Shown here one piece after another: positions 28,789 through 63,297 of a stretch of 64,000 nt of DNA. This DNA is from Octopus sinensis (Eukaryota): NCBI RefSeq assembly GCF_006345805.1, contig NW_021831284.1, positions 1-64,000 on the forward strand, in the 5' to 3' direction. The notes under the pieces are model-generated. The model was not told where the DNA came from, ran no database searches, and worked only from the letters and a program-made list of their open reading frames with translations. Position 1 is the first letter of the stretch; each line of letters begins with the position of its first letter. Made by a program: the position numbers and the translations under genes.

Positions 28789-28872
28789 GGAAATTCAAGG
28801 AATTTTATCAAGAAACTAGCTTGGCAGCTCGCTTCGCTCACCGCGAAGCGTAAAAATATTAACTATTTAGTT

Positions 28873-29095: not shown

Positions 29096-29384
29096 AAGCT
29101 GAAGAAAAAACGGTCAGCTTAAGGTAATTAATTAAATCTTTTTTGTGTGTCGCTTTTTTGGCTGCTGCTACTCTGCCTGCCCCATTTCCGCCAGTGGTTT
29201 GTCTAATCAAGGTCACTAAGCTAAATCTCCGGACTATAAAGGCTCTTAAGCATTATCTTAATTGGCTGTTAAAAAAATTAGACAGGTTGTTGCCGTGGCG
29301 GCAGAGATTTTTTTTGTTTATACTATTTTACAAATTTTTAAAGTTTTTTATTTGTTTTTTTTATTTTTTTTGTTATTTTCTAAA

Positions 29385-34387: not shown

Positions 34388-37300
34388 GCATTAAATAAAG
34401 GTAGTTAACTTTAGGCTTACTAACATTAAAAAAATAAGTTTTTAATAGATTAATTACATGATCAAAAACTAATAAAGCACCGTTGAAATTTATACATAAA
34501 AATAACATTTGTGATAATCAAAGGATTAAAGTACACTCAACCCTTTCAAATTGGCCATTTTTGGTTCCTTCAATTTTGTTGGCCAATTGGAGAAATGGCC
34601 AATTAGAGAATAAAATCGATAATTTTTTAAGAAACTACTTAAATTTATCTTCAAAAATAAGTTGACCACCTTCACAAAGAACACGTTTCTAATCCAAATA
34701 CTTAAAGTAATGACATGGATTTTATTAGGAATTCTATTCATGTATAAATAATAATTTATTTTATTAAATTTACTTTTTTATAAAATAAAATCTAATATTG
34801 TAAATTTTTCGTGTTGCGCTGATAATGAATTCAATCTTACGATTTGAAGCTCTTTCTGGATGTCACAACGAGAGCGTTCCTTGCTATATTCTTGACATTG
34901 ATGGATTTAACATTTTACTTGATTGTGGGTATGACATGAAGTGTAGTGAAGAATATCTCATTCAACTAAAAGAGTATTCCCAAAATATTCTAATTTAGTA
35001 CTTGCTGTAAAATCGACGCAGTTTTATTGTCATATCCCGACAATTATCACATCGGAGCACTTCCGTATTTAGTTTGCAGCTGCTCACTTTCATGCTCTGT
35101 TTATGCAACAATTCCTGTTTATAAAATGGGCCAATTATTCCTTTATGATTTCCATCAAGTTTCAATATTTTAATCTTAATGTTCATTAGTCTGTCAGTAA
35201 TGAAATTGAATTTGATTTGTATTCTCTCGATGATGTCGATACGTCTTTCAGCAGAATAAAGCAAGTCAAATACAACCAAACTGTTGTTTTAAATGGTATT
35301 GAGTCTATCATATAAAAAAGACAATTTACAGGTCATACCACTTCCCTCGGGACATATGATTGGCGGGACGGCCTGGAAAATAATCAAAGACAACGAAGAG
35401 GAAATCATTTATGCTATTGATTATAATCATAAAATTGAGAGGTGAGATATTAGAGCTCTTATTTGGCAGGCACCTTAACAGCGGCAACTTTAAAGACAAT
35501 ATTTATAGGCCACTCTTGGTAATAACAGACGCCTTTAATGCAAACTATGTTCATCCAAAGCGTAAAAACCGGGAAGAATTGCTTTTAAGTTCATTCAGTT
35601 GTTAATATTTGTAGATACGATTCAAAGTACATTAGAAAATAAAGGAAACGTGCTTATTTGTGCAGATACTGCAGGCCGAGTGCTAGAATTGATTCATATT
35701 TTAGTTTTCTAACGTTTTTTGACCATAGGAACACGCATGGGGAGTTTGGGACTCAAATTTGAATGACAAAAACTTGGATTTATCCCCGAATCAACTCGTT
35801 TTTCTTTCTAACGTAACACAAAGTGTCATGAAGTTTGCAAAGTCACAGGTTTGATTATTTTGTTAAATTTTAGGTCGAATGGATGTCTGACAAAATACAA
35901 AAATCCTTTGAAGAACATCGATTTAACCCTTTTGAACTAAAATACTTTAAGCTTTGTCATAATTTAGCAGACATTGATAATATAAAACAGCCAATGGTGC
36001 AAAAATATACTTCAATTGGAATTAGGTTGTTGTAACCAGCATGGGAGATCTTGAATACGGATTTGGTAGAACTTTCTTTTTGAGATGGGCTGGGGATAAG
36101 AGAAATTGCATCATTTCGACAAGGAGAGCAATGCCTTCTACTTTAGCGAGGATAATTACTGAGAAAACTACAGATTTAAAGAATTTATCAATAATTGTAA
36201 ATTTTTTATTCTCATTAAAGGCTCGTTTCAAGACTAAAAAAACTATTCGCCATTCACTTACTGAAACCAAAGGAAAGTTTGAAAAACAAATACGGTTTTG
36301 TGTATGTACTCTTATTTATAGAATCAAGCAGGAATATATACCATCGTGTGATGACAATGATATTGAAGACGATTTTAAAGATGATGAGATCAAACAAGAT
36401 ATTTATCTACCGGATAAAGTTATTTTTAATCAGAATACAACTACAGTTCAATAGCAGTGGATATATGCTATTTAATCGAAAACCTACTCAAACATTTCCA
36501 TTTAAAGAAGCGAAAAAAAATTACGACGAATACGGAGAAATCATTGAGTATTTTACCCATTTTCACTGTTTTTTCTAGTCGTGCTTTGTTTCATGAAAAG
36601 AAAATTCCTCACAAAAAGGTTGTTTTAAATATTTTATTAAAATTAGGATAAAATTAACGAAGAATGTTTTTGTTGGCAATATTTATTTTAGATAATATAA
36701 AATCTGAGGAGTTTGAGAATTATTATGAGCTTAACACAGTGGAGGAATATACCAGTGAAATCCGACATGTTGATGTACGGGCAAAATCACTCTTTATCGA
36801 CTTTGAGGGTAGGTCTGATGGCGATTCTATTCGGAGGATCCTTCAGCAGATTAGGCCAAAAAATCTAGTAAATATGGAATTGCTAGTCTTCTTAGATTCT
36901 CGTGCATTCTAGTACTGAGAGTGCCAATTCTCTCACTCGTCACTGTTCTGCCAATTCGCTGGTTTCTGGCAAGACATTTTCTCCAAAAATATTTGAAAAT
37001 ATTGACGTCATAAGCGATTCTTCAATGTTACAGGTTTTATTAGAAGTTTAATAGAAATTAGGTGAGAATGAAGGATTCGCTTTTAAATTCGTTAAAGTTT
37101 ATACAAACTCCTGATTCTTGCGACATTTCGTGGATTGATTGTGTCGTTGAAAATTCAGAATGTTTTAATTCTGAGGCCAAACGAAAGGCCCTGCCTTTGC
37201 TTTCTGATATTTCATCGCTTGACGTAAAGAATTTTTTGATAAGATTAATCGATAGGCAGCTCCTCATTCCGCTGTGTTTTTTAACGATCCAAAGCTTTTG

Positions 37301-40300
37301 AACGTTAAGGAAACTTTAGAACAAAGCAAGGTCGAATGCGAATTTGTAAGTGGAGGAACTTTGTTATGTGGTGGTGTCATTTCATTAAAAAAAGATGGGA
37401 CTCAAGTTATGTTGGAAGGGCCGTTGTGTTCTCTATATTATAATGTGCGTGATGTACTTTATTCTTTTTATTCTGTTATTTGATTCAGTGATTTTTTCTA
37501 TTAATTCATATTTAATTTGAACTGTATTTATTTATTGATTTTATAATTTAAATTGTTAAATTAGTTAAAATGCAATTTGCGGTTATACAATTGAGTCCCG
37601 CATCTTTATTATTAAATAATAACTGAGGCAGTAGATTGCATTTTCAAGTAAAAAATGTAATTTTGAAAAAAAGGGTTGAAAGTATTCATTATAATTTATC
37701 AAATTTCTCTTCTTCTTTTAAGGAATTTTTTAATATTTTAATTTTTAGATCTTATGTTTTAAATTTATTATTAAAAATCAGAATTTTAAACTAAAAAGTA
37801 AATATCTATGACTAACCTAATTTACGTCAGTTACGGTGAATAATTTGAATAAATTGAATTTTATCGCTTTTTCTAACTAACCATTTTATGTTTTCTCAGT
37901 CAGAAGGAGGTGAAAACTGCCTGCTTCAAATAGGAGATATTGTAAGCTTGCATCTTCAAAGTGATTATAATGGATTTTTATCGACATTGGGGTAGTTGAA
38001 TTTTAATAAAAATATGCTTTTGATTTATAAAAATAGTCCAAAAATTATTAAAAATGAAATTTAACCATTTAGATTGGTTGACGACCGATGTATGGTAAAT
38101 CCTTCATCTGGAGATTCTTCTTCTCCACCAAACAAATTTAGAGGTACATAACCATTCTTTCACCTATTTTTTAGATTGTCATTTTAAAATTCTTCCAATG
38201 AATAAATATTCAGCACAGAAACAGTTCAATGTGGCTTGTCAAAGTCAAGGCTTGGAAGAAAATAATGAAGTTTTGCTTAAAAAACTACACGTTAGACTTT
38301 TATTAGTTGATTTTAAGGACGCCGCGCAAACAGAATTTAAGCACAACGAAATCATAAACGAAAAATTGCAAGGAACAGTAGTACAGTACGGAACCATTAT
38401 TCAAGTAAAATTTAAGCAAATTAAATTAAGTTTTTGCACATTAAAAGTAACAAGTTTCTATCTTGCAGTCAGCGTGTTCAAGCACCATTAGAAAAGAATG
38501 CACTTTCAGTTTATTTGAGTCGTCAAGGAAAAGACGAATCATGGTTTGTAGTGGTTCCTCACTATAAATTGCGGTCAGTTGGCGATAACGTAGATTTTTA
38601 ATAATATAAACGAAGGTCATCATTGGAGACAATTTAATTTTTAAGCCAGTAGGACTCAATATATGCTTGCATGCAAGTAATCTTGAGCTAAAAGATTATC
38701 CAGGATGCAAAGAAGTAGATAATAACTAACTAAATTTTATAGGTCAATTGCTTACAACAAAGTTGCCCATGGAAAATTATTTTATTTTTAAAATATTCAG
38801 AAAATTCAGAAGATGTTCTAAAGGGGGTTTGGAAAAATTAATAATATATTTAAAGGGAGACGTCGTCCGTTTATTTCATGCCGAACAAGAAAAATATCTC
38901 ACAAGTGACCGATATAAAAAAACGCAATATGTTTTTCTAAGAACTACTTGGCGTTTATCTGCAACAACTGCTACAAGTTCGCAAGCTCTGTGGGAAGTTG
39001 AAGTTTGTGGTGATTCAGAAATTTATTTAAGGTTGTCAAAAATGATCCTTGTCGAAGTGGTGCTGGCCAATGGAATAATTTTTACCGATTCAAACATCTT
39101 GCGACTGGCCACTACCTTGCTGTAGAAGTCGACAATTCAATTTCATCTGACTTTAAAAATGAAAACAAAAACAGTTTTACGCTAGTTTGTGTGCCACATG
39201 GTCAAGATATTTCTACATTATTTGAACTTGATCCGACATCCCCCAGCCGTGGAAGTCTTCACGTTCAGAGGTAAATGAGAACAAATGTCTCATTCTTAGA
39301 GATTCATATGTCAGACTCTTCCATACTTCTACGAAAACTTGGATTCGAAGTACAGCTATTCCTATTGATAAAGACCAAGAAAGGCCAATTATGAACAAAG
39401 TTTATTTATGTTTTATATACTGAGGTTTCATGCACTGCTCAAAAAGACGACAAAGAAGCATTTGCATTTTTATCTGTCTCTAGACAAGAAGTTAGAGATT
39501 TAGACTTTGCCAATGATGTTTGTCATGTTTTGGAAAATATTGCAAAAAGTATGAGAATCAGATTACTTACTCAACAAGAACAACAGTATGAAAACTATTG
39601 TCTACCTTTTATAGAATGACAGAAAATATTTTGAAGGAATTGATATTTTTTATTGGACATTTGGAGGATCAATATCAAAATTTGAATGCAATTGAGATCC
39701 ATCCTTTTCGAGTAAAATGTGATCGAGATAGACAAAAATTAATTCGCGAACAAAATTGTCTTACATGGGCTTTGCTTTAATAAAATAACTTTTAGGTAAT
39801 TGGAATAATGCAGTCTCCTTTTGGAGAAAGAACCCCCCATACTGACTATTTGACAGACATTAATTGTTCTTATTATATTCAAATATGTCGTTTATGTTAT
39901 CGATTAATTAACCTTTCTCAACACAATTATCGGAAAAATCAAGTTTTCATTTTTATTCTAAAAAATAAACCAGGAATGGATTGCTATGAACATTAGTTTT
40001 ATGCAGTCACAAATAGGCCATGGAGTCTATGCTGAAGATACAATAACTTTAATTCTACACAACAACGTGAAACTATTAAAAAATTTGATTAAAAGTCGTG
40101 AAATAGAAACTTTCATAATGCTAGCTCGTCAGAAAAAATCATACAAGTTTGTTAACTATTCATCATTATTAGATTTCTTGACTACTTATCTTCTCTTTGT
40201 ATATCAAATAATGTTGCAATACCAGAAACTCAAGAATTGATTTGTAAATGTTTGTTAACCGAGAGCAATAAGGATATTTTAATTCAAACAACGTATTAGA

Positions 40301-43300
40301 TTCAAGATAAACATTTAGTATTAAAAAATACAGTTCATCGTTTTTTCAAGTTTCTTCACACAATGAATCACTTTCGGAGGAAGATAATGTGGACGTTTAT
40401 ATTATTTACGGAGACGATAAAAGAGAAAGAATTCTTCGAAATGTTCAAATAAATGCGAATAACGAAAACCAACACGATATAAATATTATGGAATACTATC
40501 AGTACATTATTATTAAATTATATAAGACATCAAATTGATCTATATTCGTACATGTGCCTTGATCGCCAATACATTGCGATAAACACGTTATCCAAGGAAT
40601 TCACTATGGAAATAATAATTAAGTGACTTTAATAAATGGTTTAACTATTAAGGTGCATAAATGACTCATTTTTGTCATATAATTTAAGATCTTCATTTTG
40701 TCGCTTACTCTTACATCTACATATTATCCGGGATCCTCAAGAGCTGGCAATTCCGGTAAAATATTCACGTGTTTGGTCTTCCGTAACAAAAAAGGCAATC
40801 TCCGGGTTAGTGAGATTGTCAATTCTTTATAATTTAGTAATTTAAAAAACGACTCAAAGTCCGAAAAATATTCAAAATTTAGTGAATTATGTCTGTTCCT
40901 AAAAAAATTTATCTTGGACTTACGTAATTCTGAAAAACAGTTTTGCAATGACATTAAAAACGAATTTATTTACGAAGTAAAGTGTGAGTATTGTAATATA
41001 GATGATTAACCTTACAAAACATATGGTCTACTTTGGATTTTTTAATTCTTTTGATCTTAATGAAATGGCAAGCTCTTTACTGGCTATTCTTAACATACAG
41101 TCAGATCACAAGCATAAAGGAAATAAAATTATTTTCCGTATTATTCATTTCAAAAATATTTCAAACTATGTAGAATTTCCAAAGACTGAAAAATTTTCGT
41201 GGTACGAAGATAACAAACGAATTTTTAAAAAATCAGCAAAAGAGAAAATTTTTGATATAAAAACAAAGATACTTGAAATCCTACAAGTAAAAGCTTTTAC
41301 CAACTTTTCCAGTTTATTATAGAAACACATTTAAACAGCACTATTACGCAAATACTATCTTACTACCACAATGAAATAACTATAAATTCTGAAGGTAAAA
41401 TATTTTTTCAGAAATAATAGAGTCGATAGAGAAAATTGCAATCAACATAGAACAACTATATTTAAACAAGTTATTAATTTTATTTATAATATTAAGTGAC
41501 AATGTTATTAACAATTTGGGCTATGTTGAGAACAGCAAAGAATTTTTGCAAGTTATGATTAACCTCATCTTGGATGAAAATTCTAATATAACTTCTTGGG
41601 CTTTGCAAATCTTATTCAAGACATTTTCGACATTTCATGACACAATTAAGACTTTAAAAGAAGTAAACAATAATTATAATTAATTTTAGGTACAACTGTT
41701 GACCACAGACGAAGATATCAATAACTACAATAAAATAAAACAAGATATTCGTCGCCTGAGAATTTTGGTGGACAAATCTGAATTATGGATATATAAAAAG
41801 CAAAAAGAAGAATTTTCCTGTTCAATTTCTCCTAAGGTTGATTCTTTTCTAAATGTCATTAGATTGTTTTAATCGATGAAAATTTTAAAGAACGTGGAGA
41901 ACGGATTACCAGTGGAAAAGAAGATTTCATGCAAAGTAAATCGGTTATTTTTTAATTTAATTTTGTTTTTAGTGCATAAATATTATTAATGAAGATATAA
42001 ATTATTCTTCGGATTCGATAGTAAAAGAAAATTACGTTTTGATGAGAGAAATTTTACAGAGATTGGCAGATTTCTGTGTCAGTGATATATCTGAGTCCAA
42101 ATTAAAAATTCACACAGAGAATCAAAAACTGTTAAAAAATCTTAGAGTAAATAAAGTTATAACTGGCTTGTTGAAAATATCGTACGAAAAAGTTATGGCA
42201 TAAACATAAAAAAATGTAGGAAGACGAATTAATGATCGAAATAATGAAATTGGCTCATATCGCACTGCAGAATCTCTGTCGTGACAATAAAATAAATCAA
42301 ACAATACTTTACAAAGATATCGAATCAATCCTGGAATTTAGCGTACATTTACCATTAAAAAAATAGATTGATGGGATCTGTACTGCCACAGCAATCGTTG
42401 AAAATAATTTAAAAATATGCGAGAGCATGCCTTTGAGTATAATTCAAAAAGTGGTTATGGAAATCGAATCTTTTGGACACAATCCAGAATGTCTCATATT
42501 TCTTCAGAAAATCGTGACTGTCAATAATGAATGCATTAAGCGAAACCAGGAATATGTTTTAAAAGAGGTTTATAGTGGTTCTAAGAATTTACTAGATTTT
42601 GAGTGCTAGTGATAAAGTAATTTTTCTAATTAACAATCGAGAGGCACGAGAGAATTTAAATAAATTAATGTCTTCTGTCAACTGTCAAATAAAATCAAAT
42701 GTTCGTGTTATACCCAGAAAAGTTCTTTATCATATTGAAGTGATAAATTTGCTTACAATGATCACCAAAGGAAAAAATGTGTTTACTGAATTAAAATGTC
42801 AATCACTTGTGACTACTGATGATATAAAAGAGATTCTTTTCACGAATAGCTGCCTCCTTGAGATAAAACTCGCTTATACATATTTTTTGCTTCACTGTTA
42901 CATAGACACTGAGGTGGAAGCTAAGGAATTTTTCCAAAGCGCCATCGTTTGGGAGATATTTGAAAAACTAGTTGAGGATGTTGAGAAGGTTTATTTTAAA
43001 GTTTTTGATAACTCCAGTACACTGAAAACGTTAAAAAAGATTGCCACGAATGTCATATAAATAATAAATACATTTCAACTCTCATAGATGTATTTACATC
43101 ATTCTTTTCGTCCAGTTTTCTTCATTACAGCGGAGCATTACAAGTTATAGTAATTTTTTGCGAATGTGCTTATTTTTAGGCGAGACAGTCATTTTGTCAA
43201 CGAGTTGTGAATTCATTAGTAAAGATGTACGAGTGCGAGTTTCTTAATTCTGAAATGATTAATGCTTCCATAATATGCTTAAAGTCGTTTTGGGACTTGT

Positions 43301-44454
43301 GTAATCAATAATAAATATTAATTTTAAAGTCCATAGTCGGGACATTGCAATGCTTCCAGAAACAGAGAAGAAAGTTACTTCAATTTTTAGCACAAAATAC
43401 CTTATGACCAAATCATCTTTAACGTGGAAAAATACACATTTAAAAAAACAGAAAACGTTAAACAAACAAGGAATTAACGAAATATTTGATGTATCAACTA
43501 TATCATTTTTATTTAAATTAGTCTTTGGTAGAAAAAATGGACGATAAGTTCAAAGATTATTCAAAAATAGAGAATTCAGTATTAATCGAAATTTTTTACC
43601 AGCCGGAATTATGTGTACCAAAAATATCTCCGCTCCATCAAACATATTCAAATGGAAAACTAATTTCCTCGTTAACTCAATGTTATATAATTATAGTATA
43701 ATTTCTCATATATCAGAAAAAATTAAACAAAGCAAAGACTTTGGAATTATCTCTCGCTTGCTAGATGCCATTATAGCAATGATATATGTTAAAAATACTA
43801 AAACTGAAGTATAGTTTTATTCAATAATGTTACAGGAGAACTGGCTGAAAAATAAACTGACAAATCGATATTTTGACAAATCCTATTTTTACATGGAAAA
43901 TGGGTACTTGAGAAATAAATCTGACGATTTTAATTATTTCCTATTAAAGAAACGAGAAGTTGCTGATATGCAGGTAAATTTTTCAATCCCACTTGCAAGA
44001 CATATTTAAACGAAAAAGGAATAGCCAAACTTCTAGTAGAGCTTATCATTAATAGCACCTGTACAAACAGTTTTCTGAAATCCGTTCAATTAGGAATAGC
44101 ATTATTGGACGGCGGAAACGTTTCTGTTCAAGTAGAATCGAATAAATATTTAAATATAGAAAAAATTATACACAAATATAGTCGAATGCAAAAATGCCGA
44201 AATTTTTTTTCAAAATATTAAAAAATACATGGAAAAAGCCCGACAGGCGTGTAAAATATCTTATCAATCAGCAGTAAAACCACTTTTGGAAGATTTCAAT
44301 AATTTAAGTATATTTTAAATAGTACAATATTTATTAGATCGGAGTAAGGGATCAGAAAGAAAGAAAATAGACAAGCTTCTTGAATCTTTAAATATTATCA
44401 AATCAAAAAATCAAACTTCTCAGTTTATAGCAATTTTTATATAAAATATTAAAG
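34202..44454 (+). repeat. Second copy of the segment at 1-12998 (initial offset 34,201 bp), without the LINE
   Basis: ORF tracks are identical at a constant offset (794/34995, 1210/35411, 6801/41002), and direct sequence comparison agrees. Confidence 0.95.
34825..37483 (+). CDS. CPSF2: CPSF100, copy B, multi-exon
   Basis: Essentially identical to 624-3282; one substitution was seen (AACTTTGAT vs AACTTGGAT, F/L). Confidence 0.96.
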
Positions 44455-49150: not shown

Positions 49151-50228
49151 GCTTTTACCTAACAATGGGGATTTCGTGGAGGAAGATCCACAGGGGACTG
49201 CCTCAGGGAGTTAGAGCACCAATTATCCCGTGCTGACAGAAATGAAGCATGGCTAACTGTGGTGTGTCTGGATCTGGCCAAAGCCTTCGATAGCGTGTGG
49301 CACCTGGGCCTACTCTCCAGAATCCATGACATCGGAGCCGGGATAAAGACCTATCGATGGCTGGAGAGCTTCTTGTCAGGAAGACAATCATTTGTCCGCT
49401 GTGGAAACCGCCTATCTGGGTGTGTGGAACTTAGAAGGGGAGTCCCGCAGGGATCTATCTTGAGTCCACTTCTGTTCAACCTCTTCTTGGCGGACATTCC
49501 TCTGCCGTCGACACGTACTGGCAAGCTCGTTATCTATGCTGACGATATCCTGGTCATGGATACCTCGAAAAGGATATCGCAGTCTTGGAGACGACTGAAA
49601 TCATACATTGCAACGCTAAAGATGTGGACTATAGAGAAGGGTTTGACCCTAGCACCGGAGAAGAGCACCATTTCATGGTTGCGGAGAGGGAGTCGCTATG
49701 CGGAGTCTTGTGCATATGCGATGAGTAGCTATGTGATGGATCTCTCGAAAAGAAAAAATCTTTCTTACCTGGGAGCAACCATTAACTGTCGTGGCTCGTA
49801 CGTAGAGCATATAGCAAATCAGAGAAAGAGGAGTGTGAGGATCCTCAAAAGCTTAACCAGGTTCCATCTGGATCCGGAAACGTACATCTACGTATACAAA
49901 ACGTGTGTGCAGCCAGTCCTCACATATGGCTACGAGGGCTGGTACGGTACGGAGGAGAGTGACTACCTGATCGAACAGTTGGAAAAGACAAGACGTTTCG
50001 CTATGAAATTGGCTTACGGAGTACAACTTGACGGAAGGCTAAAAGACTCACAAGAATCCTCTGTGCCCACGATCCGGATGGTCTTGGAGAATTGTCGTCA
50101 AACATGACTAGTATTGGGATACGCATGGAAAGAGACACTTCGGTGCCTTGTTTTTATCTCCCCGCCGATGTTTTTCTTCCTTGTTTTTCTTTTTCTTTTC
50201 GCTCAATAAACACTATTCTATTCTATTC
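49151..50228 (+). mobile_element. 5'-truncated Jockey/I-like LINE (RT C-terminal half)
   Basis: Reads LDLAKAFDSVWHLGLL, GVPQGSILSPLLFNLF, YADD. The 3' end is AATAAA + (TATTC)3. 14-bp TSD TAAGAGTCATATTT at 49137-49150 and 50229-50242. Same family as 8005-10767. Confidence 0.92.
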
Positions 50229-53154: not shown

Positions 53155-53720
53155 TTAGTCATAATCGCTATCAATGATCCTTTCATCTTCACCCTTCCGG
53201 TCAACAAAACACTGTGGAGGATCCTCCCGCATCTCTTCTTCCTGTTTAGATACAAAATTAGGATTTATCCCAGGCAATTCAGTCATGCATTGCTCACGTC
53301 GAGCCTAAATTTAAAGAAAACGCCAACTTGATCAAATAGCTCCGTTTGTAACTTTAGAAGCTCATCAATAGTAAGTTCAGAGTTTTCTAAAAGACCTTTT
53401 TTCCGTAGTTTTTTTGATTCAAAAATATCATTTGCATTGCAATGGACACGTGCGTCGGCGGAAAATTCGGGAAAGCCAATATTTTTGACAGCCTCCAGAA
53501 GTATTTCTTCATTTATGGTCTTTCTTTTTGCTTTATCACAAATTTTGGCAGCCTCAGCAGCTACTGAATGTACAAACGTTGTACAGCAATCACGTATGAA
53601 TGATTTACATTGAGTTGAGAGTTTCAAGTCAGGCATTATGTCTTTAATAGCTTTATTGACTGCCAACTGAGATATGCTAACATCGTCATGATCACTTTTA
53701 AATTCAATATCAGATTTCAT
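53155..53720 (-). CDS. DR1: Negative cofactor 2 beta / Dr1 (histone-fold TBP repressor), one 23-nt intron
   Basis: DDVSISQLAVNKAIKDIMPDLKL..FIRDCCTTFVHSVAAEAAKICDKAKRKTINEEILLEAVKNIGF..ELLKLQTELFDQ|ARREQ is collinear with NC2-beta. Confidence 0.9.
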
Positions 53721-54733
53721 GTTAAAAACAAAAATAAGAAAATGAACCAACAACAAAATATAACAAGAATTTTTTTATTCAAAATTTAATTAATACAAAC
53801 AATAAAGGCTAAACTATTTAACCTATTGGTGAATAGTTACCGTCAATTCTTTAAAGTTTAAACCGTCCATTTCCTACGCCTGCAAATCATAAGGAGCACG
53901 GTTATCGTGGTTCAACAGGAGGCGAATCAAGAAGGTCCAACAAAGGGCCCACAGATTAATCGAACGTTGGTCCACGAATACAAACGCTCCGGTCCGGCTC
54001 CTCTGGAAGACCTTATCAAGCTGAACCTCGGTCCGTCAACAAATGCCCCGGCAAAAACGGACTGCCGCCCGGTGTGATCTTGTGTAGGCTCGTAGAAAGA
54101 TCACCGTGCAAGTAAGAGGTCCCTGGTCGAGTGCATCAGGATCACGTGACTTTTTTTGATTCTTACCGTGGTCCTGGTGTTTTTAAAAAAACCTGCCGAT
54201 GGAGGAGCTTGGTGAATAGAATTTCAAAATGTGAGGCAAAAACGGGAACTTAGTTAATTTACATTCTTTTTTTTAATGATAATAATTTAACCTCGTAAAA
54301 TGGGCAGTATATACAGAACTTTTTACGTGTTAGAAAGTCAAGACGGTTAATAACGATCTTGTTCTCGGCCAAGGACACTGCAAATTACTAGAACATGTTC
54401 TCGACCACTCGGCTAGCTGGCCACGGTATATAAACTAATTATCGAATTATTATTTTAGTGAGGATCACTTTCAAAATTCTAAAATTTTATATTCTTTTAA
54501 TTTAATATTTCTTAAATTATTTATATTTAGATTCAAGTAATTATTTGATTTTAAATAAAATATATAATTTGTTTTCTTGTTAAAGTCTAAATTGATTTTG
54601 ATTTATCGGTTGGTTCTTTACTTTGCATTTTTTGGTTCTGATGATTGATAACTATTTTTTAATAATATCCTATTTTTTATAATTTAAATTAGTTCATTAT
54701 TTATTAACTCAAATTCGACGTAAAATTTATTAG

Positions 54734-57700
54734 ATGGAAGAATCACTGTTAAAAGCAGCAGCCACGAATGATTTAAAATTGCTCAACTTTTGCCTCGAAA
54801 ACAACATCTCTATCAACTCAACAAATATGGTTTCTAATTAGTCTAATAAAATGTTATCAGCTGCTGGATTGATTATTTTTATTGTTATACTCTCTTATCA
54901 ATATATCAATTAATTATTTGTAGAATGGATTGACTGCCCTCCACATTGCAGCTAAAGAGGGGAATTTAGAAATCGTGGAGCAACTTATCTCCATGGGAGC
55001 AGACATTAACGCAAAAACCCAGGTAGATAGGACATTTAAATCAATAATCTATTATTTAGATGGGGAACACTGCTCTTCACATTGCTGCTTTGTCAGGCAA
55101 AGACCAAGTTGCGGATTTCCTGATTGAAAATAACGCAAATATAAATGCACAGACAAATGTTTGTATTTTTGACTAATTTTTCTAATTAGAGAGGCTTCAC
55201 TGCTCTTTACATGTCAGCCCAGCAGAATCATATTAGCATTGCAAAGGCTCTACTGTCGGCAGGAGCCAATCCTTATTTATTAGCCGATGTACTGCCATCA
55301 TATTTATTATCTAAAAGGAAAAGTACGCTCCTCTTGCCGTGGCATCCCAACAAGGTCACACTGAGCTGATTGATTTGCTGCTAACACACGAACAAATGCT
55401 TGAAGGCACTTCGAAGTTGACAAAACTTCATATGGCCGTGAAAAAAGAAGATATTGACATTATCGAGTCTCTATTAAAGATAGATCACCCTATCGACGAA
55501 CTATCCGGTGTAAGTATATGCATAGAAATGTATTGATAGGATGGTTTTACTCCCCTGTGTACAGCTATTAACTACGGGTGTTATAAAGCTGCAGTGTGTC
55601 TCATAGAACATGGGGCTGACGTCAATATAGTTCTTAAAGTGCATTTTTATCCACTATTGATATAGAATAACAACTCTCCTATTCATTTTGCTACAAAATC
55701 TGGTAGATTAAAGTTCATAGAGTTACTTATATCTTTCGGGGCCGACGTTAATCCGAAAAATACTGTAAATGTGGTTAATTAATGTTTTAGAGTGGTATCA
55801 CGCCTTTGCACTGTGCAGCCACTTCAGGACACCAGCAAATATTGGAATATTTATTGGAAAATAATGCCGATCCAACATCTTCTACCAAAGTTGATCATTA
55901 AACTTGTTTATTTCAAGAGCGGACTCACTGCACTTCATTATGCCTGTCAGAAAAATAACGACGGATGTGCCAGATTACTTATCCGTGCGGGCGCCCAAAT
56001 AGAAGCCAAAACAAAGGTTTAATAAACCTCAAATACCTCTAGAATGGCCTGACTCCTCTTCACACCGCAGTTCACTATGGAAATGTGGCGATAATTAACC
56101 AATTGATTATTCGTGGTGCAGATTATAATGCAAGGACATTGGTAATTAAGCTCACACCTAATTAATTTAGAATGGATATACTCCTCTACATGTAGCCTGT
56201 TCACGACAAGCTATTCAAGTCGTTGAAGCACTGGTTTCGATTGACCAAGTGTTGGTAGATGATCCTGATTTGGTTTTTTCATAAATATTTAAACATGCAG
56301 GATGGATGGACTCCCCTTCACACTGTTGTTTATATGGGGAATTTGGAATTGGCGAAATATTTGGTTGATAGAGGGGCAGATTTGAATATTGTAAACAAGC
56401 AAGGACTTGGAGTTATTCACTTTGCAGCTGCAAATGGGGATATCTCTATTCTCGAATATGTCATTCAGTTGGGCTTGGATGTTAACCTTCCGGCAAGGGT
56501 TTGGTGCAAATCCTTAAATTTCTAGAACGGAGAGACTCCTTTACTGTTGGCAGTTTATTCGTGTAACGTGGAGGCTACCAAAATTCTAATCGCTAACGGG
56601 GCTGACTGTCTATTAACGTCTACTAAACATTACAATGTGCACCACATGGCTGCTAAACATGAAGTGGTTGAATTGATGGGAATTGTACACGACAATGTCG
56701 TCAAGCAAAGTGGTTCTGATCTCAACCTATCAAAGAAAACATACGTAAACAATTATTAATATTTGTTTTAGAAAGGGTTTTGCCCAATTCACATTGCCTG
56801 TAAATACGGGAGTTATAAAAACGTGGAATACTTATTGAGTGTAGGCGACGACGTGAACAGCCTGGCAGCTGTAATATAATATTAGTTAATAAATAGAGGA
56901 AACTAACTCCTTTGTTGATTGCAACCCACTACGGGAATTATAACACAGTAGAAACATTAGTGAATGGTGGTGCTAATTTGACAAGTGCTGCTTCGGTTTA
57001 GTTTGAAATTTTTCATTTTAAAGAATGGTTTCACAGCAGTTCATATTTCGATTTCATATAACAACTTTCTTATCGCTGAATTGCTTCTCTCCCGTGGTGC
57101 CTCCCCTGACACTCTTTCTAAGGAATATTTTATCTTTGTCATGCTTAGGTGGGATTCGCTCCACTTCACTTAGCCACTAGCAGATCCTCGATTGAAGGGG
57201 TTACTTTACTTTTGAAGTATTCTGCCTTTAATTCTCCTTCATCCAATGTCTTGATAATTTACATATATTGATAGGAAGGAATTACCCCAATGCATTGCTG
57301 TGCTAAAGAAGATTGTGTTGACTGTGCAGAGCTGCTCTACGCTGATGGGGCTTCTCTTAATGTTCAGAATAAGGTGGTTGTAATTTGATAATCTGTAGGA
57401 CGGATACACTCCTCTGTTGATTGCATGCTACTACGGAAGTTTGAAAATGATTTTGTTTCTCCTTAAGAATAAAGTGTCTATTGACATGCAAACTAATGTT
57501 TGTAATTTTTGAATAATTTCGATATAGATTGGTTACACTGCTCTTCACCAGGCAGCTCAACAGGGGTCTCTCGAGTTTGTTCATTTGTTATTGGAGGCTG
57601 GAGCCAATCCAGATATTTTGTGCTATGAAAATCAAACTGCTCTGGACATTGCAAGACTGTTTGATCATCCCGAAATTGTCAATGTTCTCTCCGCTTGTAC

Positions 57701-60700
57701 GACTGCTGAGACATCTGGGCCAATATCGAAAGAAAGCCGAATTGTTGGAGCACCTACGGGAATATATGAAAGCATTTACATGGAATCTGAAGAGGAAACA
57801 AGTATTTAAATTGCTGTGGCTTTTAATCGGCGTACTATAATATACACGCTTGAAATAGTTATGTAGCTTACCGCATCGTTAAGTCTTTGATGCTGTTGTG
57901 CATTGCCGTTTTAATTATTGCTGTATTATGTTTTTTTTTGATACAATATTTAATCGGTTATTAATTTAATCTTATTTTTAGGTGACGCTCATACATTAAG
58001 AAGACTTCTACGTTTCCCAAGTAAGTGTCAATAAATATATATCTAATGATAATTTCGCGTATATGACATATGTTGTCATTGCTTTTATATTTAATGGTCC
58101 CAATGAATCATTTCCTTTTTAACTATGAATTGCTTTTGCTGTGGCTCGTCTCGCAAAAAAGCCAAAAATTGGTGCAAAAGATTTTTTAGTCGCAACAAAG
58201 TCAAGAGTATATTAATCCCTGAATCATTAATATTTATTGTTTTTACTGACTATTTAAAAATTATTGGCAATTTTACTATAATTTAGAATATGTTGACAAT
58301 TCTTCAAATTTCCTGAACAGTACATATCCCGTTGGTCAGTCATTTGATGGAGTATCTGCTACAATTGTTACTACCGATATAATATTTTTGTAGGAAGGAG
58401 AGTTGAAGAGGAAAGACGGCACTGAGACTAAACTCAATGTCGCTTCTAGCGTTCCTTTGGTGTCGACTTCTTGTATATTTGAATCGAACACCCAGACCAC
58501 AAATCACGAGCAAAATAAAATTTTTACAACTTTGTGCCAAAAACAGTTACGTGAAAGAAATGGTAGAATATTCGCATTTGATGGTCACGGGAATCCATAT
58601 TTTTGCAAAAATTATTTTTCTTCATTAATGATTGACAAAAATGATGATGACGTTCTACGATTGTGTGATTCAACAAATGCCAATATTTGTTATGACATTA
58701 ATGGCATTCCTTTGGTTGATTCCATCGAATATTTGCTTTACTACGATTCCTCTAAGCTCCTTTTTGCAAAATCTAAAGATTCGAAGGTGTATCGGGTTCA
58801 TTATGGGGATGAAACGTATGATGATGGAAAGCAGTTAGAGAAGCCGAGTGTTTCTGTTAAACTGAGAAGTAATGAGTGCTATGATATTGAAAACAATGAG
58901 ACGACGTTTTTCGACTTTGAGGGATTCCCTATTCTAGAAGGAAATGGAATAATTCACGCAGATTATCACCGAAAACTGTACTATTTGGACCAACAACAGA
59001 AACAGGTGAAACCTTTGTATAACAGAACATATCAAATGAAGAGAGAACCTAAGGAGGTTTTAACAACATTTGACCATAACGGAAACCCACTACTTGGTCT
59101 ACTCCCAGATTCCTTGTTTTCAAAATGTGCGGATTCCTTCATGTTAAATAAATATGGGATTCCACTAATTAATAACACGGTTGCTCGTCAACTCTATTTT
59201 GACGAAGACGGGGAATTGGTATCAGTCGATGAATCAGGGAAGTCCACCACGGTTGTAATGGAAAAAAACGATTCCCCTCTCATGAACACAATGTCTCGTA
59301 TAATAAATGAAACGGATGATGCAATATATATTAGCTGTCTCAATTACAAGTCTGTGCAGTATAATTATTATGGCTTTCCTATCATTTTTGGAGATTATCG
59401 ACAAGAAGCAGTCGATTTCCGACCAAATGGATTGTTGGAACTAAACTCTAAAGTTTTATGTGATTCTACCACCAAAAAGCCCTTAGTATGGCCATTTGCT
59501 TATTCTGATATGATCTGTGACTGTAAGGGTATTTCTCTACCCTTTTCCGACCTTTCTTCTTTTATGAGATGTGTCAAAATAACTGAAGACAATATTTTGT
59601 TAAACTGTGATACTTGCACTGGAAATATGATATATTTACCCAATGGGCTGCCTTTTTGCAATACTGACCGTTCATTGTCAATGTTTTACGGAAATGACAA
59701 CCTACTTTACTGTGAAAGTGGGGAAATACTCAAGCCAGTGTTTAACAGTAATATGGAACAGATCGACATGGTGTCTGTTAATGCTCATTTCCGTGATAAT
59801 TCATACGTTACATCTTGTGATGATATTTCATATGACTGTTTTGGAATGCCATTGGTGAGGTTTGAGTCTAATTCTCTTGCTTTGGTGGCCAATGAGGATG
59901 GACGAGTATGTATAGTTGATGGAAATGACGTAAAGTCTGAATATTTCCTTCTCGACTCTCGTGGAAATTTTGTGATGCGTCGTACTCGTCTTGGTTCACT
60001 TGTTTACAATTATTATGGAAAATTGATTAATCCAAATGACTATGACGCGACTCTTGTCATGGCCGACAATCATTACTGCCTGCAATACTCAAGTCAAACT
60101 GGGCTGATTTATGATGATTCTGCGTGCCCATTAATCTGCAATTTGGATCAGACCTTATTAAGATATGATGCTTCCGGAGAACTCATGTACAATAATTTGG
60201 TAGTTTGTGATCAAGATGGTGTGCCCTTGAGGCATCCGGGTTCGTTTGTACTACGAGGGGGCGGATGTGCTTACCTTTCATCTCAATACAATCCTTCGTT
60301 TTTTTATAATTGGAGGGGAATCCCTATTACTACTGATAGCACCATTGGATCAATATTACGAAGAAATGAAGACTATACACTCTGTTTTACAGATCAAGTC
60401 AGTTCCTTTCCCCTATATTATGATTCTGACTGTTCTATCCATATTCCATCGCCCAATTTGATTGAAAATGAAAATTATTTTTATAATTCGTCTGGTTTCC
60501 GAGAAAATGGTCAAATACCATACAGAAAAATATTTTCTCGATCTGATGGAAATTTATATATAGACGAGAACACTGAGAGATGTGTTTATATGGCTAGTGG
60601 GCTTCCATATGCTTTTGTCGATAATGGATATGGAGAGGTTCTCTATTACAACAGAAATGGAGAATTAATGCACTATTCCTCGATTAACAAGAAATTGTCC

Positions 60701-63297
60701 CCCATTTATGCTCATCCTTCTACTCCTTTTACTGATCCCTGTGGTTCTGTCGTATTGTGCGATGACAAGAATGCATATGTCAAACCGGGACAGCGAGGAG
60801 GTATTTTATTTGGCTCCAATGGAATGCCATTGTTGGATGTTCCCCCAGGAAGATTAAAGTCAATATCTGATGGGACATTTTTGTTCACGCCGCATATTGG
60901 AGGAAATCCTCTCATTCTTGTTTATGAGGGCAATCATAGGCCAATCACTTGTAAAGAACAAGCCGAAATGGTTTTACTGTTTTCTGTCATTTCTAAGGTT
61001 GATATCGCTGCGGTAGAGGAGACTGGATGGGCTAGTACTGGTCTGAATGGTCCAGTAATTCCATTACTCGATAATGCAAATCTGCTGGAATGTCAATTTA
61101 CTGATAATTTCGAATCAAATATTACCGAATCTATCACTTCATTAAAGTTTGAGTTATAAAACAGAATTTTCTTAGATTCCGAGTCAATTTTATGATTGAT
61201 GCAAAGCCGAAAGTGTTGGAGAATGAGAAGCTTAGAAACATGCATATTTTTGTTGGTGTTGACACTGTTTTGCGTCCAACAAGAATAAATGTTAGTTTCT
61301 CACATCCTTCATCTGTGACTGGACCAGAATTAACAGACGGAGAATACTTTATTACAAAAATTATTCAAATCAATGCTCAGCAGGCTAATTTCAGAAGGTT
61401 TCCAGGTATTTCTATTTTAGACCTCTGGTGATTGACATTCCGTATTATTCAGTGAATGAGGCTGATCGTTCGATTAATGTCCTATATTGTATTTCCGACG
61501 GGAAGTGGCTGCCTTATCCTCCAAATGATTGCGCAGAAATTCTTAACGAGATCGTTTTGTCTTCTTTTGGTGCAGAGAAAAAAGAAGGTTTGTATAGTTG
61601 ATAGATTTAAAGATTTTTTGAATGTGCCTGCTAATGTCGTGAGGATGTGTATTAAATCATTTCCTCTCTCAATGGTTGTTATTTCACGTCCAAAAACAGT
61701 CGTTTATGAAGTGGACATCAATGAACAGACTATATACCCTAATTCTTATTGTTCTCTTACTTTTCCCGCCAATTCCGTTAAGGTCTCATCAAAAATCGCT
61801 ATTCAGGTTTTATATTTTTAATTATTTTAATAGATTCTTGATGTGGAAAAGACCGAGATTGAAGACGTTCTTGGCGGAGAGATACTCGTGAGTCCCGTCA
61901 TTGTTATAAAACCACTGAATCTCGAATTCCGAGACAATTTCAAATGCAAACTTCCCATGATTGTTCTTAATGACATTAATACTCTTCTGGGTTATGAACA
62001 CAACATACACATCTTCTCATCTACTAACTGTATATGATTTCATGTGTAATCGACACAGACAAGTCCTCTTTGTGGGAAGATGTGACTTATTCTTCGGATA
62101 TTTCTCTCTACGGGGACAGTAATGTTGTCTTCACTGCATCTCGAACAGCCAAGTAGAAAAATAAATAACGATGATAGATATTGGGCTGTGGCTGCAAGGA
62201 ACAGTGATGAAAATATTTGCCATAGTAATTTGGGAACTCTCTATAAGCGGATCATTTCTTTAAATTATTTTGCTCGCTTTGTAGTCTACGCTTTTCGGAC
62301 TTCTCCAACATTATGTCATCTCATATGTGCCTGTGTTACTGATGCAGTTCAACAATCATTTTCATTTTTCGAACACAGTGGATATCAAAATGTGATGAAT
62401 TCAAATTATTTAAAAGTATATCCGATTTTTGAATTGATATTTACAGATTCCTGGATATCAATATATTTATGTGTCTGTTTCTGGTTGGGGATCTTATTCA
62501 ATTAAGCAGAAGGATCTTTGCATTATTTATTTCGATCCCCTTTTTGAGAATTTGTTGGAAATGTATGTAGAATTTCCCTCAAGATTGGATGAGTCAACAT
62601 CTCAAAAATCATTGATATCTTTTTACAATAACAAGTCCAGGACGTTCACTAAACAGACTATTATATATCCTGATAATATACTGGTATATTTGGTGATCAA
62701 ATTTTTAGGAGTCCCCCGCCAACTCGAAACAAAACGGGCATGAATCAGAGGGTTAGTCATACTCAACAATGATTAGCTTTAGATTTTTCTGTGCCAATTC
62801 AAATTCCGAGTGACAATTATTCTGAACACTCCGAGGAGCCTATTAAGACAAATCATAGTTTTCAGTCCGAGAGTGAATCAAATGAGTTACGTTCTGAAGA
62901 GTGTGTACTAGAAATGTCGATCAATGTGGAGGACGATAATTTTACAAGAGGTAATTTTGTGTTTGACATGATTATAGTGGATTCCTGTGAACTTACCGAT
63001 GAGCTAAGAACACCTATTAATATAAGTGAGGAGAATCCAAGTATGGAATTACAGTCCGGTTAGTATGTTTATTCTGATGATAAAGATGATCCAGTTGTAG
63101 ATAGCTTGAATTTATCAGACTCAGGTGATGCTAATATTTCGAATCCCATTCAAACTTTGATTTATGAGACTAATATACAAATCACCAACGAAACACGTGA
63201 CGATCCAGCTGAATCAGGTTTGTGATTTATAATAATATTTTTAGTTCAAGTTGTGACACAAGAAGCAGAGGTGGAATCTAACCAAAGTAAATTTTAG
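54734..63297 (+). CDS. ANK: Canonical ankyrin homolog: ANK repeats, ~920-aa novel repeat domain, ZU5-ZU5-UPA-like region, acidic tail
   Basis: N-terminal repeats follow ankyrin membrane-binding-domain order (NGLTALHIAAKEG, GNTALHIAALSG, GFTALYMSAQQNH, PLAVASQQGH). ZU5A: FRVNFMIDA..PTRINV..LVIDIPYY. ZU5B: SFPLSMVVISRP..LTFPANSV..VSPVIVIKP. Introns lie between repeats. The start may have an upstream exon, and the 3' end is predicted by splicing. Confidence 0.85.

What the first reader, a model, noticed from the sequence alone, without database searches (positions are those of the whole stretch)
58394..61152. Ankyrin carrying an intron-free ~920-aa novel repeat domain between the ANK repeats and ZU5
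Seen: one 2.76-kb open exon, in a gene whose other exons are mostly ~100-300 nt. The intron at 61153-61175 (23 nt) splices it in frame to ZU5A. It is built of about 10 or more degenerate ~30-aa modules of the form (Y/F)(D/N)xxGxP(L/I)-x8-11-hx(Y/F)(D/N)x(D/N)GxL. Examples: YDINGIPL..LYYDSSKLL, LNKYGIPL..LYFDEDGEL, YNYYGFPI..VDFRPNGLL, YDCFGMPL..VANEDGRV, YDDSACPL..LRYDASGEL, YMASGLPY..LYYNRNGEL. There are also half-modules and many Cys. Known: canonical ankyrins have only a short regulatory linker here, and the giant-ankyrin exons of vertebrates lie downstream of UPA. Inference: an independently acquired beta-hairpin-repeat module, possibly captured or transferred given the absence of introns, creating a new kind of giant ankyrin.
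Basis: partly seen in the sequence, partly recalled or inferred. Interest (0 to 1): 0.8.

Follow-up and report, generated by a model that had tools for sequence, protein, structure and literature searches.

The report
Orphan repeat exon inside ankyrin gene
A canonical ankyrin gene from an animal parasite with ultra-short introns carries one 2.76-kb exon between its 24 ankyrin repeats and its spectrin-binding ZU5 domain; the exon encodes about 920 residues of a degenerate ~35-residue repeat with no detectable relative, at a position where human ankyrin-1 has only ~100 residues.

Summary
Frame 58394-61156 is open for 921 codons. It lies on the + strand between 24 ANK repeats (54734-57801) and a ZU5-ZU5-UPA block (from 61176) that aligns colinearly with human ankyrin-2 (E 6e-26). 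A 23-nt (or 29-nt) GT..AG intron joins it in frame to the first residue of ZU5A. Such intron sizes are normal in this gene. The repeat is real: GxP[LIFYV] occurs 13 times against 0.9 expected, in 13 strong and 3-4 weak copies of a ~35-aa unit. Codon usage matches the flanking ankyrin exons (r 0.85) and not the window's transposon ORFs. No relative was found in Pfam, NCBIfam, PDB or 1.84 billion cluster representatives.

- The 5' junction is unresolved. The natural donor of the last ANK exon (57802, phase 1) fits acceptors 58398 or 58401, not 58394.
- Cysteine content is unremarkable.
- Capture or horizontal transfer has no support.

The beta-hairpin fold is plausible but unproven (AlphaFold pLDDT 31 and 51). 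No transcript data could be reached.

Verdict: a native, lineage-specific, probably folded repeat domain that replaces the short ankyrin linker. It is a new variant of a known kind, of moderate interest.

The parts
54734..57801 (+). Ankyrin membrane-binding domain: 20 exons (mostly 99 nt) encoding 24 ANK repeats, plus a ~37-residue acidic tail (SACTTAETSG...MESEEET)
   Evidence: Exon and intron map. Pfam Ank 1.2e-134. The last three repeats plus tail align to human ankyrin-1 residues 701-813. The tail 57678-57800 scores coding-like, 0.273 bits/codon against a background of -0.076 +/- 0.134.
57802..58393 (+). Unusually long intron (592-599 nt depending on acceptor). Content is unresolved. It holds a candidate 39-nt mini-exon at 57982-58020 (phase 1 to 1) and an ATG-initiated ORF at 58125.
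   Evidence: GC is 0.297, against 0.246 for the short introns and 0.37-0.42 for exons. All ORFs inside score noncoding-like, -0.47 to -0.01 bits/codon. Donor and acceptor phases. 7655 possible exon chains.
58394..61152 (+). The large exon (2759 nt as given). The true 5' end is 58394, 58398 or 58401, and the 3' end is 61146 or 61152. It encodes ~918-919 residues.
   Evidence: Coding score is 0.125 bits/codon over 919 codons. Every boundary combination gives a length that is not a multiple of 3.
58394..58561 (+). Non-repeat lead of the exon (residues 1-56, EGELKRKDGTETKL...QLRERN)
   Evidence: No repeat motif here.
58562..60913 (+). Repeat array, residues 57-840. The A motif (h-x-[YF]-[DN]-x-x-G-x-P-[LI]) starts at residues 62, 100, 173, 226, 251, 323, 375w, 414, 480, 538w, 573, 605, 638, 697w, 732, 806 and 833w (w = weak). 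In window coordinates these are 58577, 58691, 58910, 59069, 59144, 59360, 59516, 59633, 59831, 60005, 60110, 60206, 60305, 60482, 60587, 60809 and 60890. A B motif (h-h-x-[DN]-x-[DN]-G-x-L) follows 16-18 residues later in most copies.
   Evidence: Self-hhalign pairs 249-331/732-814 and 257-330/579-645. No DNA-level repeat.
60914..61152 (+). C-terminal tail of the exon (residues ~841-919), leading into ZU5A
   Evidence: the last 70 codons, residues 850-919, score 0.195 bits/codon.
61153..61175 (+). 23-nt GT..AG intron (alternative donor 61147 gives 29 nt). It contains the in-frame TAA that ends the ORF if unspliced.
61176..62442 (+). ZU5A-ZU5B-UPA exons: 61176-61397, 61421-61569, 61598-61806, 61834-62029, 62059-62152, 62178-62442+, separated by introns of 23-29 nt
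   Evidence: Pfam ZU5 1.1e-11 and UPA_2 0.0013. phmmer against PDB: ankyrin-2 6m3q_E at E 6.1e-26, query 2-348 against chain 18-370; ankyrin-1 residues 913-1287. Splice map.

Best explanation
The 2.76-kb ORF is a native internal coding exon of a canonical ankyrin gene (24 ANK repeats, then ZU5-ZU5-UPA). The host is an animal parasite with ultra-short introns, most likely a dicyemid such as Dicyema japonicum, otherwise a myxobolid myxozoan.

The exon replaces most of the ~100-residue stretch that separates ANK24 from ZU5A in human ankyrin-1. In its place are ~920 residues built from 16 or more old, diverged copies of a ~35-residue unit. Each unit has two aromatic-D/N-x-x-G-x-(P)-L turn motifs, which suggests four short beta strands.

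Shown: the ORF, the repeat, its position, the in-frame 3' junction, native codon usage, and the absence of any recognisable relative.

Inferred:
(a) The exon is constitutive, because no boundary combination has a length divisible by 3. Also, the ZU5A acceptor needs a phase-2 donor, and such donors exist only at the end of this exon or inside ANK23-24.
(b) The array arose by ancient internal duplication within the lineage, not by capture.
(c) It is a folded beta-rich scaffold, not a disordered spacer. It would hold the membrane-protein-binding ANK solenoid away from the spectrin-binding ZU5-ZU5-UPA module and probably offers an extra docking surface. It would also displace or re-site the flexible linker, which I recall from the ankyrin literature to be autoinhibitory in vertebrates.
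For: - ORF of 921 stop-free codons in ~36% GC DNA.
- Coding score 0.125 bits/codon over 919 codons, from a model trained only on the flanking exons, against -0.076 for stop-free background.
- RSCU r 0.85 to both ANK and ZU5-UPA exons, with identical GC3.
- In-frame 23- or 29-nt intron into the first residue of ZU5A.
- The ZU5 exon has no upstream in-frame ATG, so it must be fed by an upstream exon. This is the nearest one.
- The ORF is open from the acceptor for 78 codons before its first Met.
- Exon length is never 3n. Donor phases.
- Repeat statistics. No DNA-level repeat, so the duplications are old.
- Composition resembles the folded flanks: S+E 13.8%, SETDKP 35.9%, YFW 11.6%. Giant-ankyrin long exons have >55% SETDKP (PMC5135030).
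- The pseudo-MSA AlphaFold model gives strands at 12-15, 21-24 and 30-33 of one unit, with pLDDT 56-73 over that unit.
- Human ankyrin-1 has ~100 residues between the aligned end of the ANK tail (813) and ZU5A (913). Here there are ~930.
Against: - No transcript evidence of any kind.
- The 5' junction is ambiguous. The best-looking acceptor (TAG|G at 58394) is out of phase with the natural donor 57802.
- The intron in front (~595 nt) is some 20 times the gene's norm and could hide a promoter or further exons.
- Both structure models are low confidence (pLDDT 30.8 and 50.7), and Foldseek found nothing (best E 1.3).
- The function is pure inference.
- Small in-frame 3n introns inside the exon cannot be excluded.
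- The protein searches returned nothing even for this gene's own ZU5-UPA. So 'no homologue' says nothing about sister species.
Confidence: 0.6

Rival explanations
1. Two transcription units or an internal promoter. The ANK repeats end at the stop 57807-57809 as an ANK-only product. A second transcript starts inside the ~595-nt gap (for example at ATG 58125, MNCFCCGSSRKKAKNWCKRFFSRNK, a palmitoylation/polybasic-looking N-terminus with a phase-0 donor at 58200 that fits acceptor 58394). That transcript would encode repeat domain + ZU5-ZU5-UPA without ANK repeats.
For: - The gap is anomalously long for this gene.
- The frame of the last ANK exon runs into a stop 6 nt after donor 57802.
- The best acceptor, 58394, is phase 0, as is the donor after the ATG-58125 ORF (and reading).
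- From memory, ANK-less ankyrin isoforms are known in vertebrates.
Against: - The ATG-58125 ORF scores as noncoding, -0.47 bits/codon, and so does every other ORF in the gap.
- The phase-1 donor 57802 has two compatible acceptors (58398, 58401) that continue the long frame.
- The 24 ANK + ZU5-ZU5-UPA architecture is one gene in cnidarians, the placozoan Trichoplax and bilaterians (PMC5135030).
Confidence: 0.13
2. The exon is foreign or mobile in origin: a retroposed, transposon-derived or horizontally transferred intronless gene captured between two ankyrin exons.
For: - It has no frame-shifting introns, in a gene that otherwise has an intron every ~100-270 nt.
- The window is full of retroelements (RVT_1 hits).
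- A long atypical intron lies immediately upstream.
Against: - Codon usage and GC3 are indistinguishable from the flanking ankyrin exons and unlike the window's transposon ORFs.
- There is no transposon domain and no other Pfam or NCBIfam hit.
- There is no relative among 1.84 billion representatives that include bacteria and viruses. The single hit is a spurious PEGA-repeat kinase.
- There is no second copy in the window.
- Splice phases fit the host gene at the 3' end.
- An ancient, fully ameliorated capture from the same genome cannot be excluded.
Confidence: 0.07
3. A giant-ankyrin-type exon that has merely moved: a fast-evolving, largely disordered spacer equivalent to the long exon found downstream of UPA or the death domain in bilaterian ankyrins.
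For: - Long single exons are a recurrent ankyrin feature.
- Their sequence evolves too fast for homology to be seen.
- Their position has already shifted once in evolution (PMC5135030).
- Some carry internal repeats.
Against: - Its composition is not that of long exons: S+E 13.8% against ~25%, the top-six set 35.9% against >55%, and it is rich in Y/F/L/I/V/N/G.
- The regular aromatic-D-x-x-G turn motif implies structure.
- Its position is upstream of ZU5A, where that paper describes no long exon. The paper searched only downstream of UPA.
- At 2.76 kb it is below the >3 kb criterion used there.
Confidence: 0.1
4. A non-functional relic or annotation trap: the ORF is skipped or is a decaying pseudo-exon, and the functional mRNA joins ANK to ZU5 by junctions not recognised here.
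For: There is no expression evidence. The splice signals of this organism are minimal (GTa / AG; PMC13644364), so many junctions are formally possible.
Against: - 921 codons without a stop, where stop-free background windows of 40 codons are already uncommon (2117 of 20000 sampled).
- The codon score is positive along the whole length, including the first 77 and last 70 codons.
- The repeat motif is kept in one frame throughout.
- Direct joining of the natural ANK donor (phase 1) to ZU5A acceptor 61176 (phase 2) breaks the frame.
Confidence: 0.05

Closest known systems
Giant ankyrin long exons (vertebrate ankyrin-G 480 kDa and ankyrin-B 440 kDa, Drosophila Ank2-L/XL, C. elegans UNC-44 long form)
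   Same: A single, exceptionally long exon within an otherwise finely split ankyrin gene, which greatly enlarges the protein. It shows no detectable homology between lineages, and some carry internal repeat arrays (PMC5135030).
   Different: The long exons described in PMC5135030 lie downstream of UPA, before or after the death domain. This one lies between ANK24 and ZU5A. Known ones are Ser/Glu-rich (about 25% S+E, >55% S/E/T/D/K/P). This one has 13.8% and 35.9% and is aromatic and aliphatic rich. It is 2.76 kb, below the >3 kb criterion of that survey.
The canonical ANK-to-ZU5 linker of ankyrins
   Same: Same position in the protein. The acidic stretch just after ANK24 is retained here (ESIYMESEEET) and aligns with the human ankyrin-1 tail up to residue 813.
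   Different: About 100 residues in human ankyrin-1 (813 to 913), against ~930 here. Here the region is a motif-bearing repeat array.
YD / Rhs-type beta-hairpin repeats (teneurins, bacterial Rhs-family shells)
   Same: The core signature, aromatic-D-x-x-G-x-L, is the B motif here (LYFDEDGEL, LRYDASGEL, LYYNRNGEL). The spacing from A motif to B motif is 16-18 residues, close to my recalled YD period of ~20.
   Different: There is no match to the Pfam RHS_repeat or NCBIfam YD-repeat models. A profile of the units hits no teneurin or Rhs chain in the PDB. Alternate motifs carry G-x-P-L. Spacing between units is irregular (25-94 residues). The protein context is cytoplasmic.
Ricin-type beta-trefoil sub-repeats (e.g. 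actinohivin)
   Same: The unit profile weakly matches each of the three ~38-residue sub-repeats of actinohivin (whole-chain E 0.005). A ~35-40-residue, four-strand unit fits.
   Different: Each individual stretch is far below significance (i-E 12-250). There is no QxW motif and no Pfam Ricin_B hit. This is a lead only.

Membership tests
Canonical ankyrin (ANK24 - ZU5-ZU5-UPA - death domain) | N-terminal array of 24 ANK repeats | tested here: met
   20 exons, 24 repeats by inspection. Pfam Ank 1.2e-134. Best PDB matches are the ankyrin-1 and ankyrin-2 repeat domains.
Canonical ankyrin (ANK24 - ZU5-ZU5-UPA - death domain) | Tandem ZU5-ZU5-UPA supramodule | tested here: met
   Pfam ZU5 1.1e-11 with two stretches. 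UPA_2 is only 0.0013, below the cut-off. However, one colinear alignment of query residues 2-348 to ankyrin-2 ZU5-ZU5-UPA has E 6.1e-26.
Canonical ankyrin (ANK24 - ZU5-ZU5-UPA - death domain) | C-terminal death domain | not testable with these tools
   The window ends at 64000, ~1.5 kb after UPA. Only an acidic, S/E/D-rich stretch is seen at 62773-63222, with no Pfam hit for 62773-63060.
Giant ankyrin (long-exon isoform) | Long exon (>3 kb) located downstream of the UPA domain | tested here: not met
   The exon is 2759 nt and lies upstream of ZU5A. Criterion from PMC5135030.
Giant ankyrin (long-exon isoform) | Ser/Glu-dominated composition (S+E ~25%, S/E/T/D/K/P >55%) | tested here: not met
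   S+E 13.8%, S/E/T/D/K/P 35.9%.
YD / Rhs repeat | Match to the family profiles (Pfam RHS_repeat, NCBIfam YD repeat) or to solved YD-shell proteins | tested here: not met
   No hit at E <= 10 in Pfam, NCBIfam or PDB, by sequence or by unit profile. HMMER's filters drop very weak hits, so a very remote relation is not excluded.
YD / Rhs repeat | Regular ~20-residue Y-x-Y-D-x-x-G-R-L hairpins forming a continuous sheet or shell | tested here: inconclusive
   The D-x-x-G-x-L turn motif is present, and [YF][DN]xxG occurs 12 times against 1.0 expected. The period is irregular, and the models are too weak to show a shell.
Cell-wall / choline-binding hairpin repeat | Match to the Pfam CW_binding profiles, with a ~20-residue G-W...Y-Y-F-D-x-x-G-x-M period | tested here: not met
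   No Pfam or PDB sequence hit. The LytA choline-binding domain appears only as a non-significant Foldseek row (E 3.6).
Ricin-type beta-trefoil | Threefold ~40-residue sub-repeat with a QxW motif, and a profile match | tested here: inconclusive
   Actinohivin has whole-chain E 0.005 from three sub-threshold stretches. No QxW motif and no Pfam hit.

The most novel reading that the evidence does not exclude
A previously unseen intracellular repeat fold, built from ~35-residue double-hairpin units, has been built into the ANK-to-ZU5 junction of ankyrin in one parasite lineage. This would create a 'giant' ankyrin by a route independent of the long exon found downstream of UPA in other animals. It would put a rigid, ~800-residue folded scaffold, possibly a new cytoskeleton- or membrane-protein-binding platform, where other ankyrins have a short flexible linker.
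Probability: 0.35. Interest if true: 0.65.

Novelty: new variant of a known kind. Interest (0 to 1): 0.5.

Why it matters
Ankyrin is one of the most conserved adaptors of animal cells. Jegla et al. 2016 (PMC5135030) report that mouse, fly and sea-anemone ankyrins share roughly 50-64% identity across the ANK-to-UPA core.

A constitutive ~920-residue folded insert at that point would therefore be notable for four reasons:
- It would show that the two halves of ankyrin can be separated by a large domain and still, presumably, work.
- It would be a second, independent way of making an enlarged ankyrin.
- It would add an orphan repeat family with a clear sequence signature for structural study.
- It is an example of large-exon gain in a genome otherwise known for extreme reduction of genes and introns.

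If it is instead an internal-promoter isoform, it would still define a new partner domain for the ZU5-ZU5-UPA spectrin-binding module.

Tried and rejected
- Homology searches of the whole insert and of unit profiles found nothing usable. The only hit of the exhaustive search, P0001, is a bacterial kinase with PEGA repeats that matches one 48-residue stretch eight times. I rejected it as spurious.
- A ZU5-UPA query against the word-indexed database found nothing, and exact look-ups of three window ORFs found nothing.
- blastp of the insert against itself gave no off-diagonal hit. Significance had to come from shuffling tests and an HMM. Self-hhalign gave only weak pairs (P 0.012-0.19).
- Single-sequence AlphaFold was useless (pLDDT 30.8).
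- A pseudo-alignment of overlapping shifted windows failed because MAFFT aligned the identical overlaps (A2). A second one of non-overlapping segments (A4) raised pLDDT only to 50.7. Foldseek on that model was non-significant.
- Enumerating exon chains across the 57.8-58.4 kb gap gave 7655 solutions and was abandoned as uninformative.
- A scan for hidden in-frame introns in the exon found a few 27-nt GT..AG candidates (59017-59043, 60971-60997) but nothing compelling.

Full report
**What is there**

On the + strand the frame starting at 58394 is free of stops for 921 codons, up to 61156. It is bounded by TAG at 58391-58393 and TAA at 61157-61159. The window is ~36% GC. In comparable background sequence only about one in ten sampled 40-codon windows is stop-free, so chance is excluded. 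The first methionine is residue 79, so the open 5' part behaves like an internal exon and not like a gene start. No ORF longer than 67 codons overlaps it on the other strand.

**The host gene**

Upstream, 54734-57801 holds 20 short exons, mostly 99 nt, that encode 24 ankyrin repeats. Their introns are 25-37 nt, plus one of 94 and one of 52. Pfam gives Ank at 1.2e-134. The last three repeats with their tail align best to residues 701-813 of human ankyrin-1.

Downstream, exons from 61176 to about 62442 are separated by introns of 23-29 nt. They encode a polypeptide that aligns in one colinear stretch (residues 2-348) with the ZU5-ZU5-UPA module of human ankyrin-2 at E 6.1e-26, and with ankyrin-1 residues 913-1287. 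Pfam gives ZU5 at 1.1e-11.

This is therefore a canonical ankyrin. No death domain is seen before the window ends.

**Junctions**

GT at 61147 gives a 29-nt alternative. Both are phase 2 and both read in frame into FRVNFMIDA, which aligns with FLVSFMVDA at the first strand of ZU5A. A second 23-nt intron lies at 61398-61420, so this size is normal here. The ZU5A exon has no in-frame upstream ATG, so it must be fed by an upstream exon.

The 5' end is less clear. The last ANK exon stays open to a stop at 57807. Its final donor, 57802, is phase 1. The 41 codons before that donor score as coding: 0.273 bits/codon against -0.076 +/- 0.134 for stop-free background. They also fall within the alignment to the human ankyrin-1 tail. 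A phase-1 donor fits acceptors 58398 (AAG|G) or 58401 (GAG|A), not the better-looking 58394 (TAG|G). That acceptor needs a phase-0 donor, at 57678, 57684 or 57744.

The ~595-nt gap is about twenty times the usual intron size of this gene. Its ORFs all score as noncoding. They include a 39-nt candidate mini-exon and an ATG-initiated MNCFCCGSSRKK... ORF. Frame-preserving exon chains across the gap number 7655, so sequence alone cannot settle the join.

Whatever pair of boundaries is used, the exon length is not a multiple of three. The ZU5A acceptor needs a phase-2 donor, and such donors are found only at the end of this exon or inside ANK23-24. By frame logic the exon is therefore not a skippable cassette.

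**The repeat**

Counts against 2000 shuffles:

| Pattern | Observed | Shuffle mean |
|---|---|---|
| GxP[LIFYV] | 13 | 0.93 (max 5) |
| h-x3-[GA]-x-P-h | 12 | 0.41 |
| [YF][DN]xxG | 12 | 1.04 |

Ungapped 25-residue window pairs scoring at least 35 number 23, against 1.0 in 60 shuffles. An HMM of 13 units recovers them at 23-30 bits and adds three weak copies.

The unit is about 35 residues. It has an A motif (h-x-Y/F-D/N-x-x-G-x-P-L/I), then 6-10 residues, then a B motif (h-h-x-D/N-x-D/N-G-x-L). A motifs are 25-94 residues apart, with degenerate units between them. Self-hhalign pairs stretches of 67-83 residues, for example 249-331 with 732-814.

There is no DNA-level repeat and unit identity is ~20%, so the duplications are old. 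Residues 1-56 and about 841-919 carry no strong copy of the motif.

**Native or foreign**

Relative synonymous codon usage correlates at 0.85 with both the ANK exons and the ZU5-UPA exons. GC3 is 0.332, identical to ZU5-UPA. The window's reverse-transcriptase and other transposon ORFs correlate at 0.16-0.44 and have GC3 of 0.48-0.57. A codon model trained only on the flanking exons scores the insert positively along its whole length. There is no paralogue in the window. Capture or horizontal transfer thus has no support, although an ancient, ameliorated capture cannot be excluded.

**Relatives**

None was found. The searches run were:
- Pfam and NCBIfam.
- PDB by sequence and PDB with two unit profiles.
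- The 5.8-billion-cluster database, with the sequence and with a profile.
- An exhaustive phmmer pass over 1.84 billion representatives, whose single hit is a spurious PEGA-repeat kinase.

The only weak signal is actinohivin, a ricin-type beta-trefoil. It has whole-chain E 0.005, made of three stretches that are each non-significant. I treat it as a lead only.

The same databases also failed to return this gene's own ZU5-UPA or any ORF of the window. The negative result therefore says nothing about sister species.

**Fold**

The composition resembles the folded flanks and not a disordered spacer: S+E 13.8%, S/E/T/D/K/P 35.9%, Y+F+W 11.6%, Cys 3.4% against 2.3-2.4%. Single-sequence AlphaFold failed (pLDDT 30.8). 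A model of residues 568-672 with nine other non-overlapping segments as alignment reached 50.7 overall. Over the first unit it reached 56-73, with strands at PLIC, LLRY and LMYN flanking the two D-x-x-G turns. Foldseek found nothing significant. A beta-hairpin or beta-meander unit is thus plausible. The overall architecture (open YD-like sheet, propeller blades or trefoil sub-repeats) is undetermined.

**Organism (inference)**

Introns of 23-37 nt with minimal GT/AG signals are reported among animals only for myxobolid myxozoans and Dicyema japonicum (PMC13644364). The window's ~36% GC, abundant LINE-type reverse transcriptases and high repeat load fit D. japonicum best. That genome has 36.7% GC, 49% repeats, a 38-bp mean intron and a 198-bp mean exon (PMC6736024).

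**Comparison with what is known**

Jegla et al. 2016 (PMC5135030) searched downstream of the UPA domain and found ankyrin long exons there, before or after the death domain. They are Ser/Glu-rich, evolve too fast for homology to be seen, and were not found in cnidarians or placozoans. The present exon differs in position (between ANK24 and ZU5A), in composition and in having a structured-looking motif. In human ankyrin-1 the corresponding segment is ~100 residues (813 to 913). Here it is ~930. No paper linking ankyrin or ZU5 with these parasites was found.

**Verdict**

The best explanation is a native, lineage-specific, probably folded repeat domain built into ankyrin at an unprecedented position. 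It most likely acts as a rigid spacer and extra docking surface between the membrane-binding and spectrin-binding halves.

Estimated confidence:
- about 0.6 for exon membership and native origin;
- about 0.5 for a beta-hairpin fold;
- about 0.2 for the proposed role.

Transcript evidence is the missing piece.

Noticed in passing
window 1-12998 and 34205-44454: Segmental duplication, or an assembly or haplotype artefact. 1-8004 equals 34205-42213 at 99.84% identity, and 10768-12998 equals 42201-44454 at 98.4%. The first copy is interrupted by a ~2.76-kb retroelement (RVT_1 4.9e-30 at 9710-10645). The duplicated segment carries part of a MIR-domain gene (Pfam MIR 2.1e-15 at 4547-4921 = 38748-39125), probably an IP3-receptor or ryanodine-receptor type gene.
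   Followed up: partly
window 12997-21731: An 8.7-kb satellite array with a 75-bp unit (higher-order period 224 bp), ~116 copies at 75-85% match. It gives long spurious ORFs on both strands.
   Followed up: partly
window 22000-29900 and 49259-50107: A GC-rich (0.45-0.51) cluster of degraded non-LTR retrotransposon ORFs (RVT_1 at 26077-26643 minus strand and 49259-50104 plus strand). There is also a Pif1-type helicase fragment (Pif1_2B_dom 1.3e-12 at 29429-29857), possibly Helitron-derived.
   Followed up: partly
window 53283-53756 (- strand): A small histone-fold gene (CBFD_NFYB_HMF 1.5e-12; NF-YB / Dr1 / POLE3-like), divergently oriented ~1 kb upstream of the ankyrin start codon at 54734.
   Followed up: partly
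window 57123-57148: The 26-nt intron between ANK19 and ANK20 begins with GA instead of GT (GAATATTTTATCTTTGTCATGCTTAG). It is either a non-canonical GA-AG intron or a base error. The only GT..AG alternative that keeps the frame would be an 11-nt intron.
   Followed up: no
window 58125-58199: An ATG-initiated ORF inside the long intron reads MNCFCCGSSRKKAKNWCKRFFSRNK. It looks like a dual-palmitoylation plus polybasic membrane anchor and ends at a phase-0 GT that would fit acceptor 58394. Its codon score is noncoding-like (-0.47 bits/codon), so it may be chance. An internal promoter giving an ANK-less isoform is worth checking in RNA data.
   Followed up: partly
window 57867-57961: If the 65-nt GT..AG interval 57802-57866 were spliced, the ANK exon would continue into TYRIVKSLMLLCIAVLIIAVLCFFLIQYLIGY-stop, a transmembrane-like tail. 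The codon score is neutral (-0.008), and this is probably an effect of AT-rich sequence.
   Followed up: no
window 62773-63222: After UPA the frame continues into an acidic, Ser/Glu/Asp-rich stretch (…SEHSEEPIKTNHSFQSESESNELRSEE…, codon score 0.10-0.24). It looks like the usual disordered C-terminal regulatory region. No death domain or long exon appears before the window ends.
   Followed up: no
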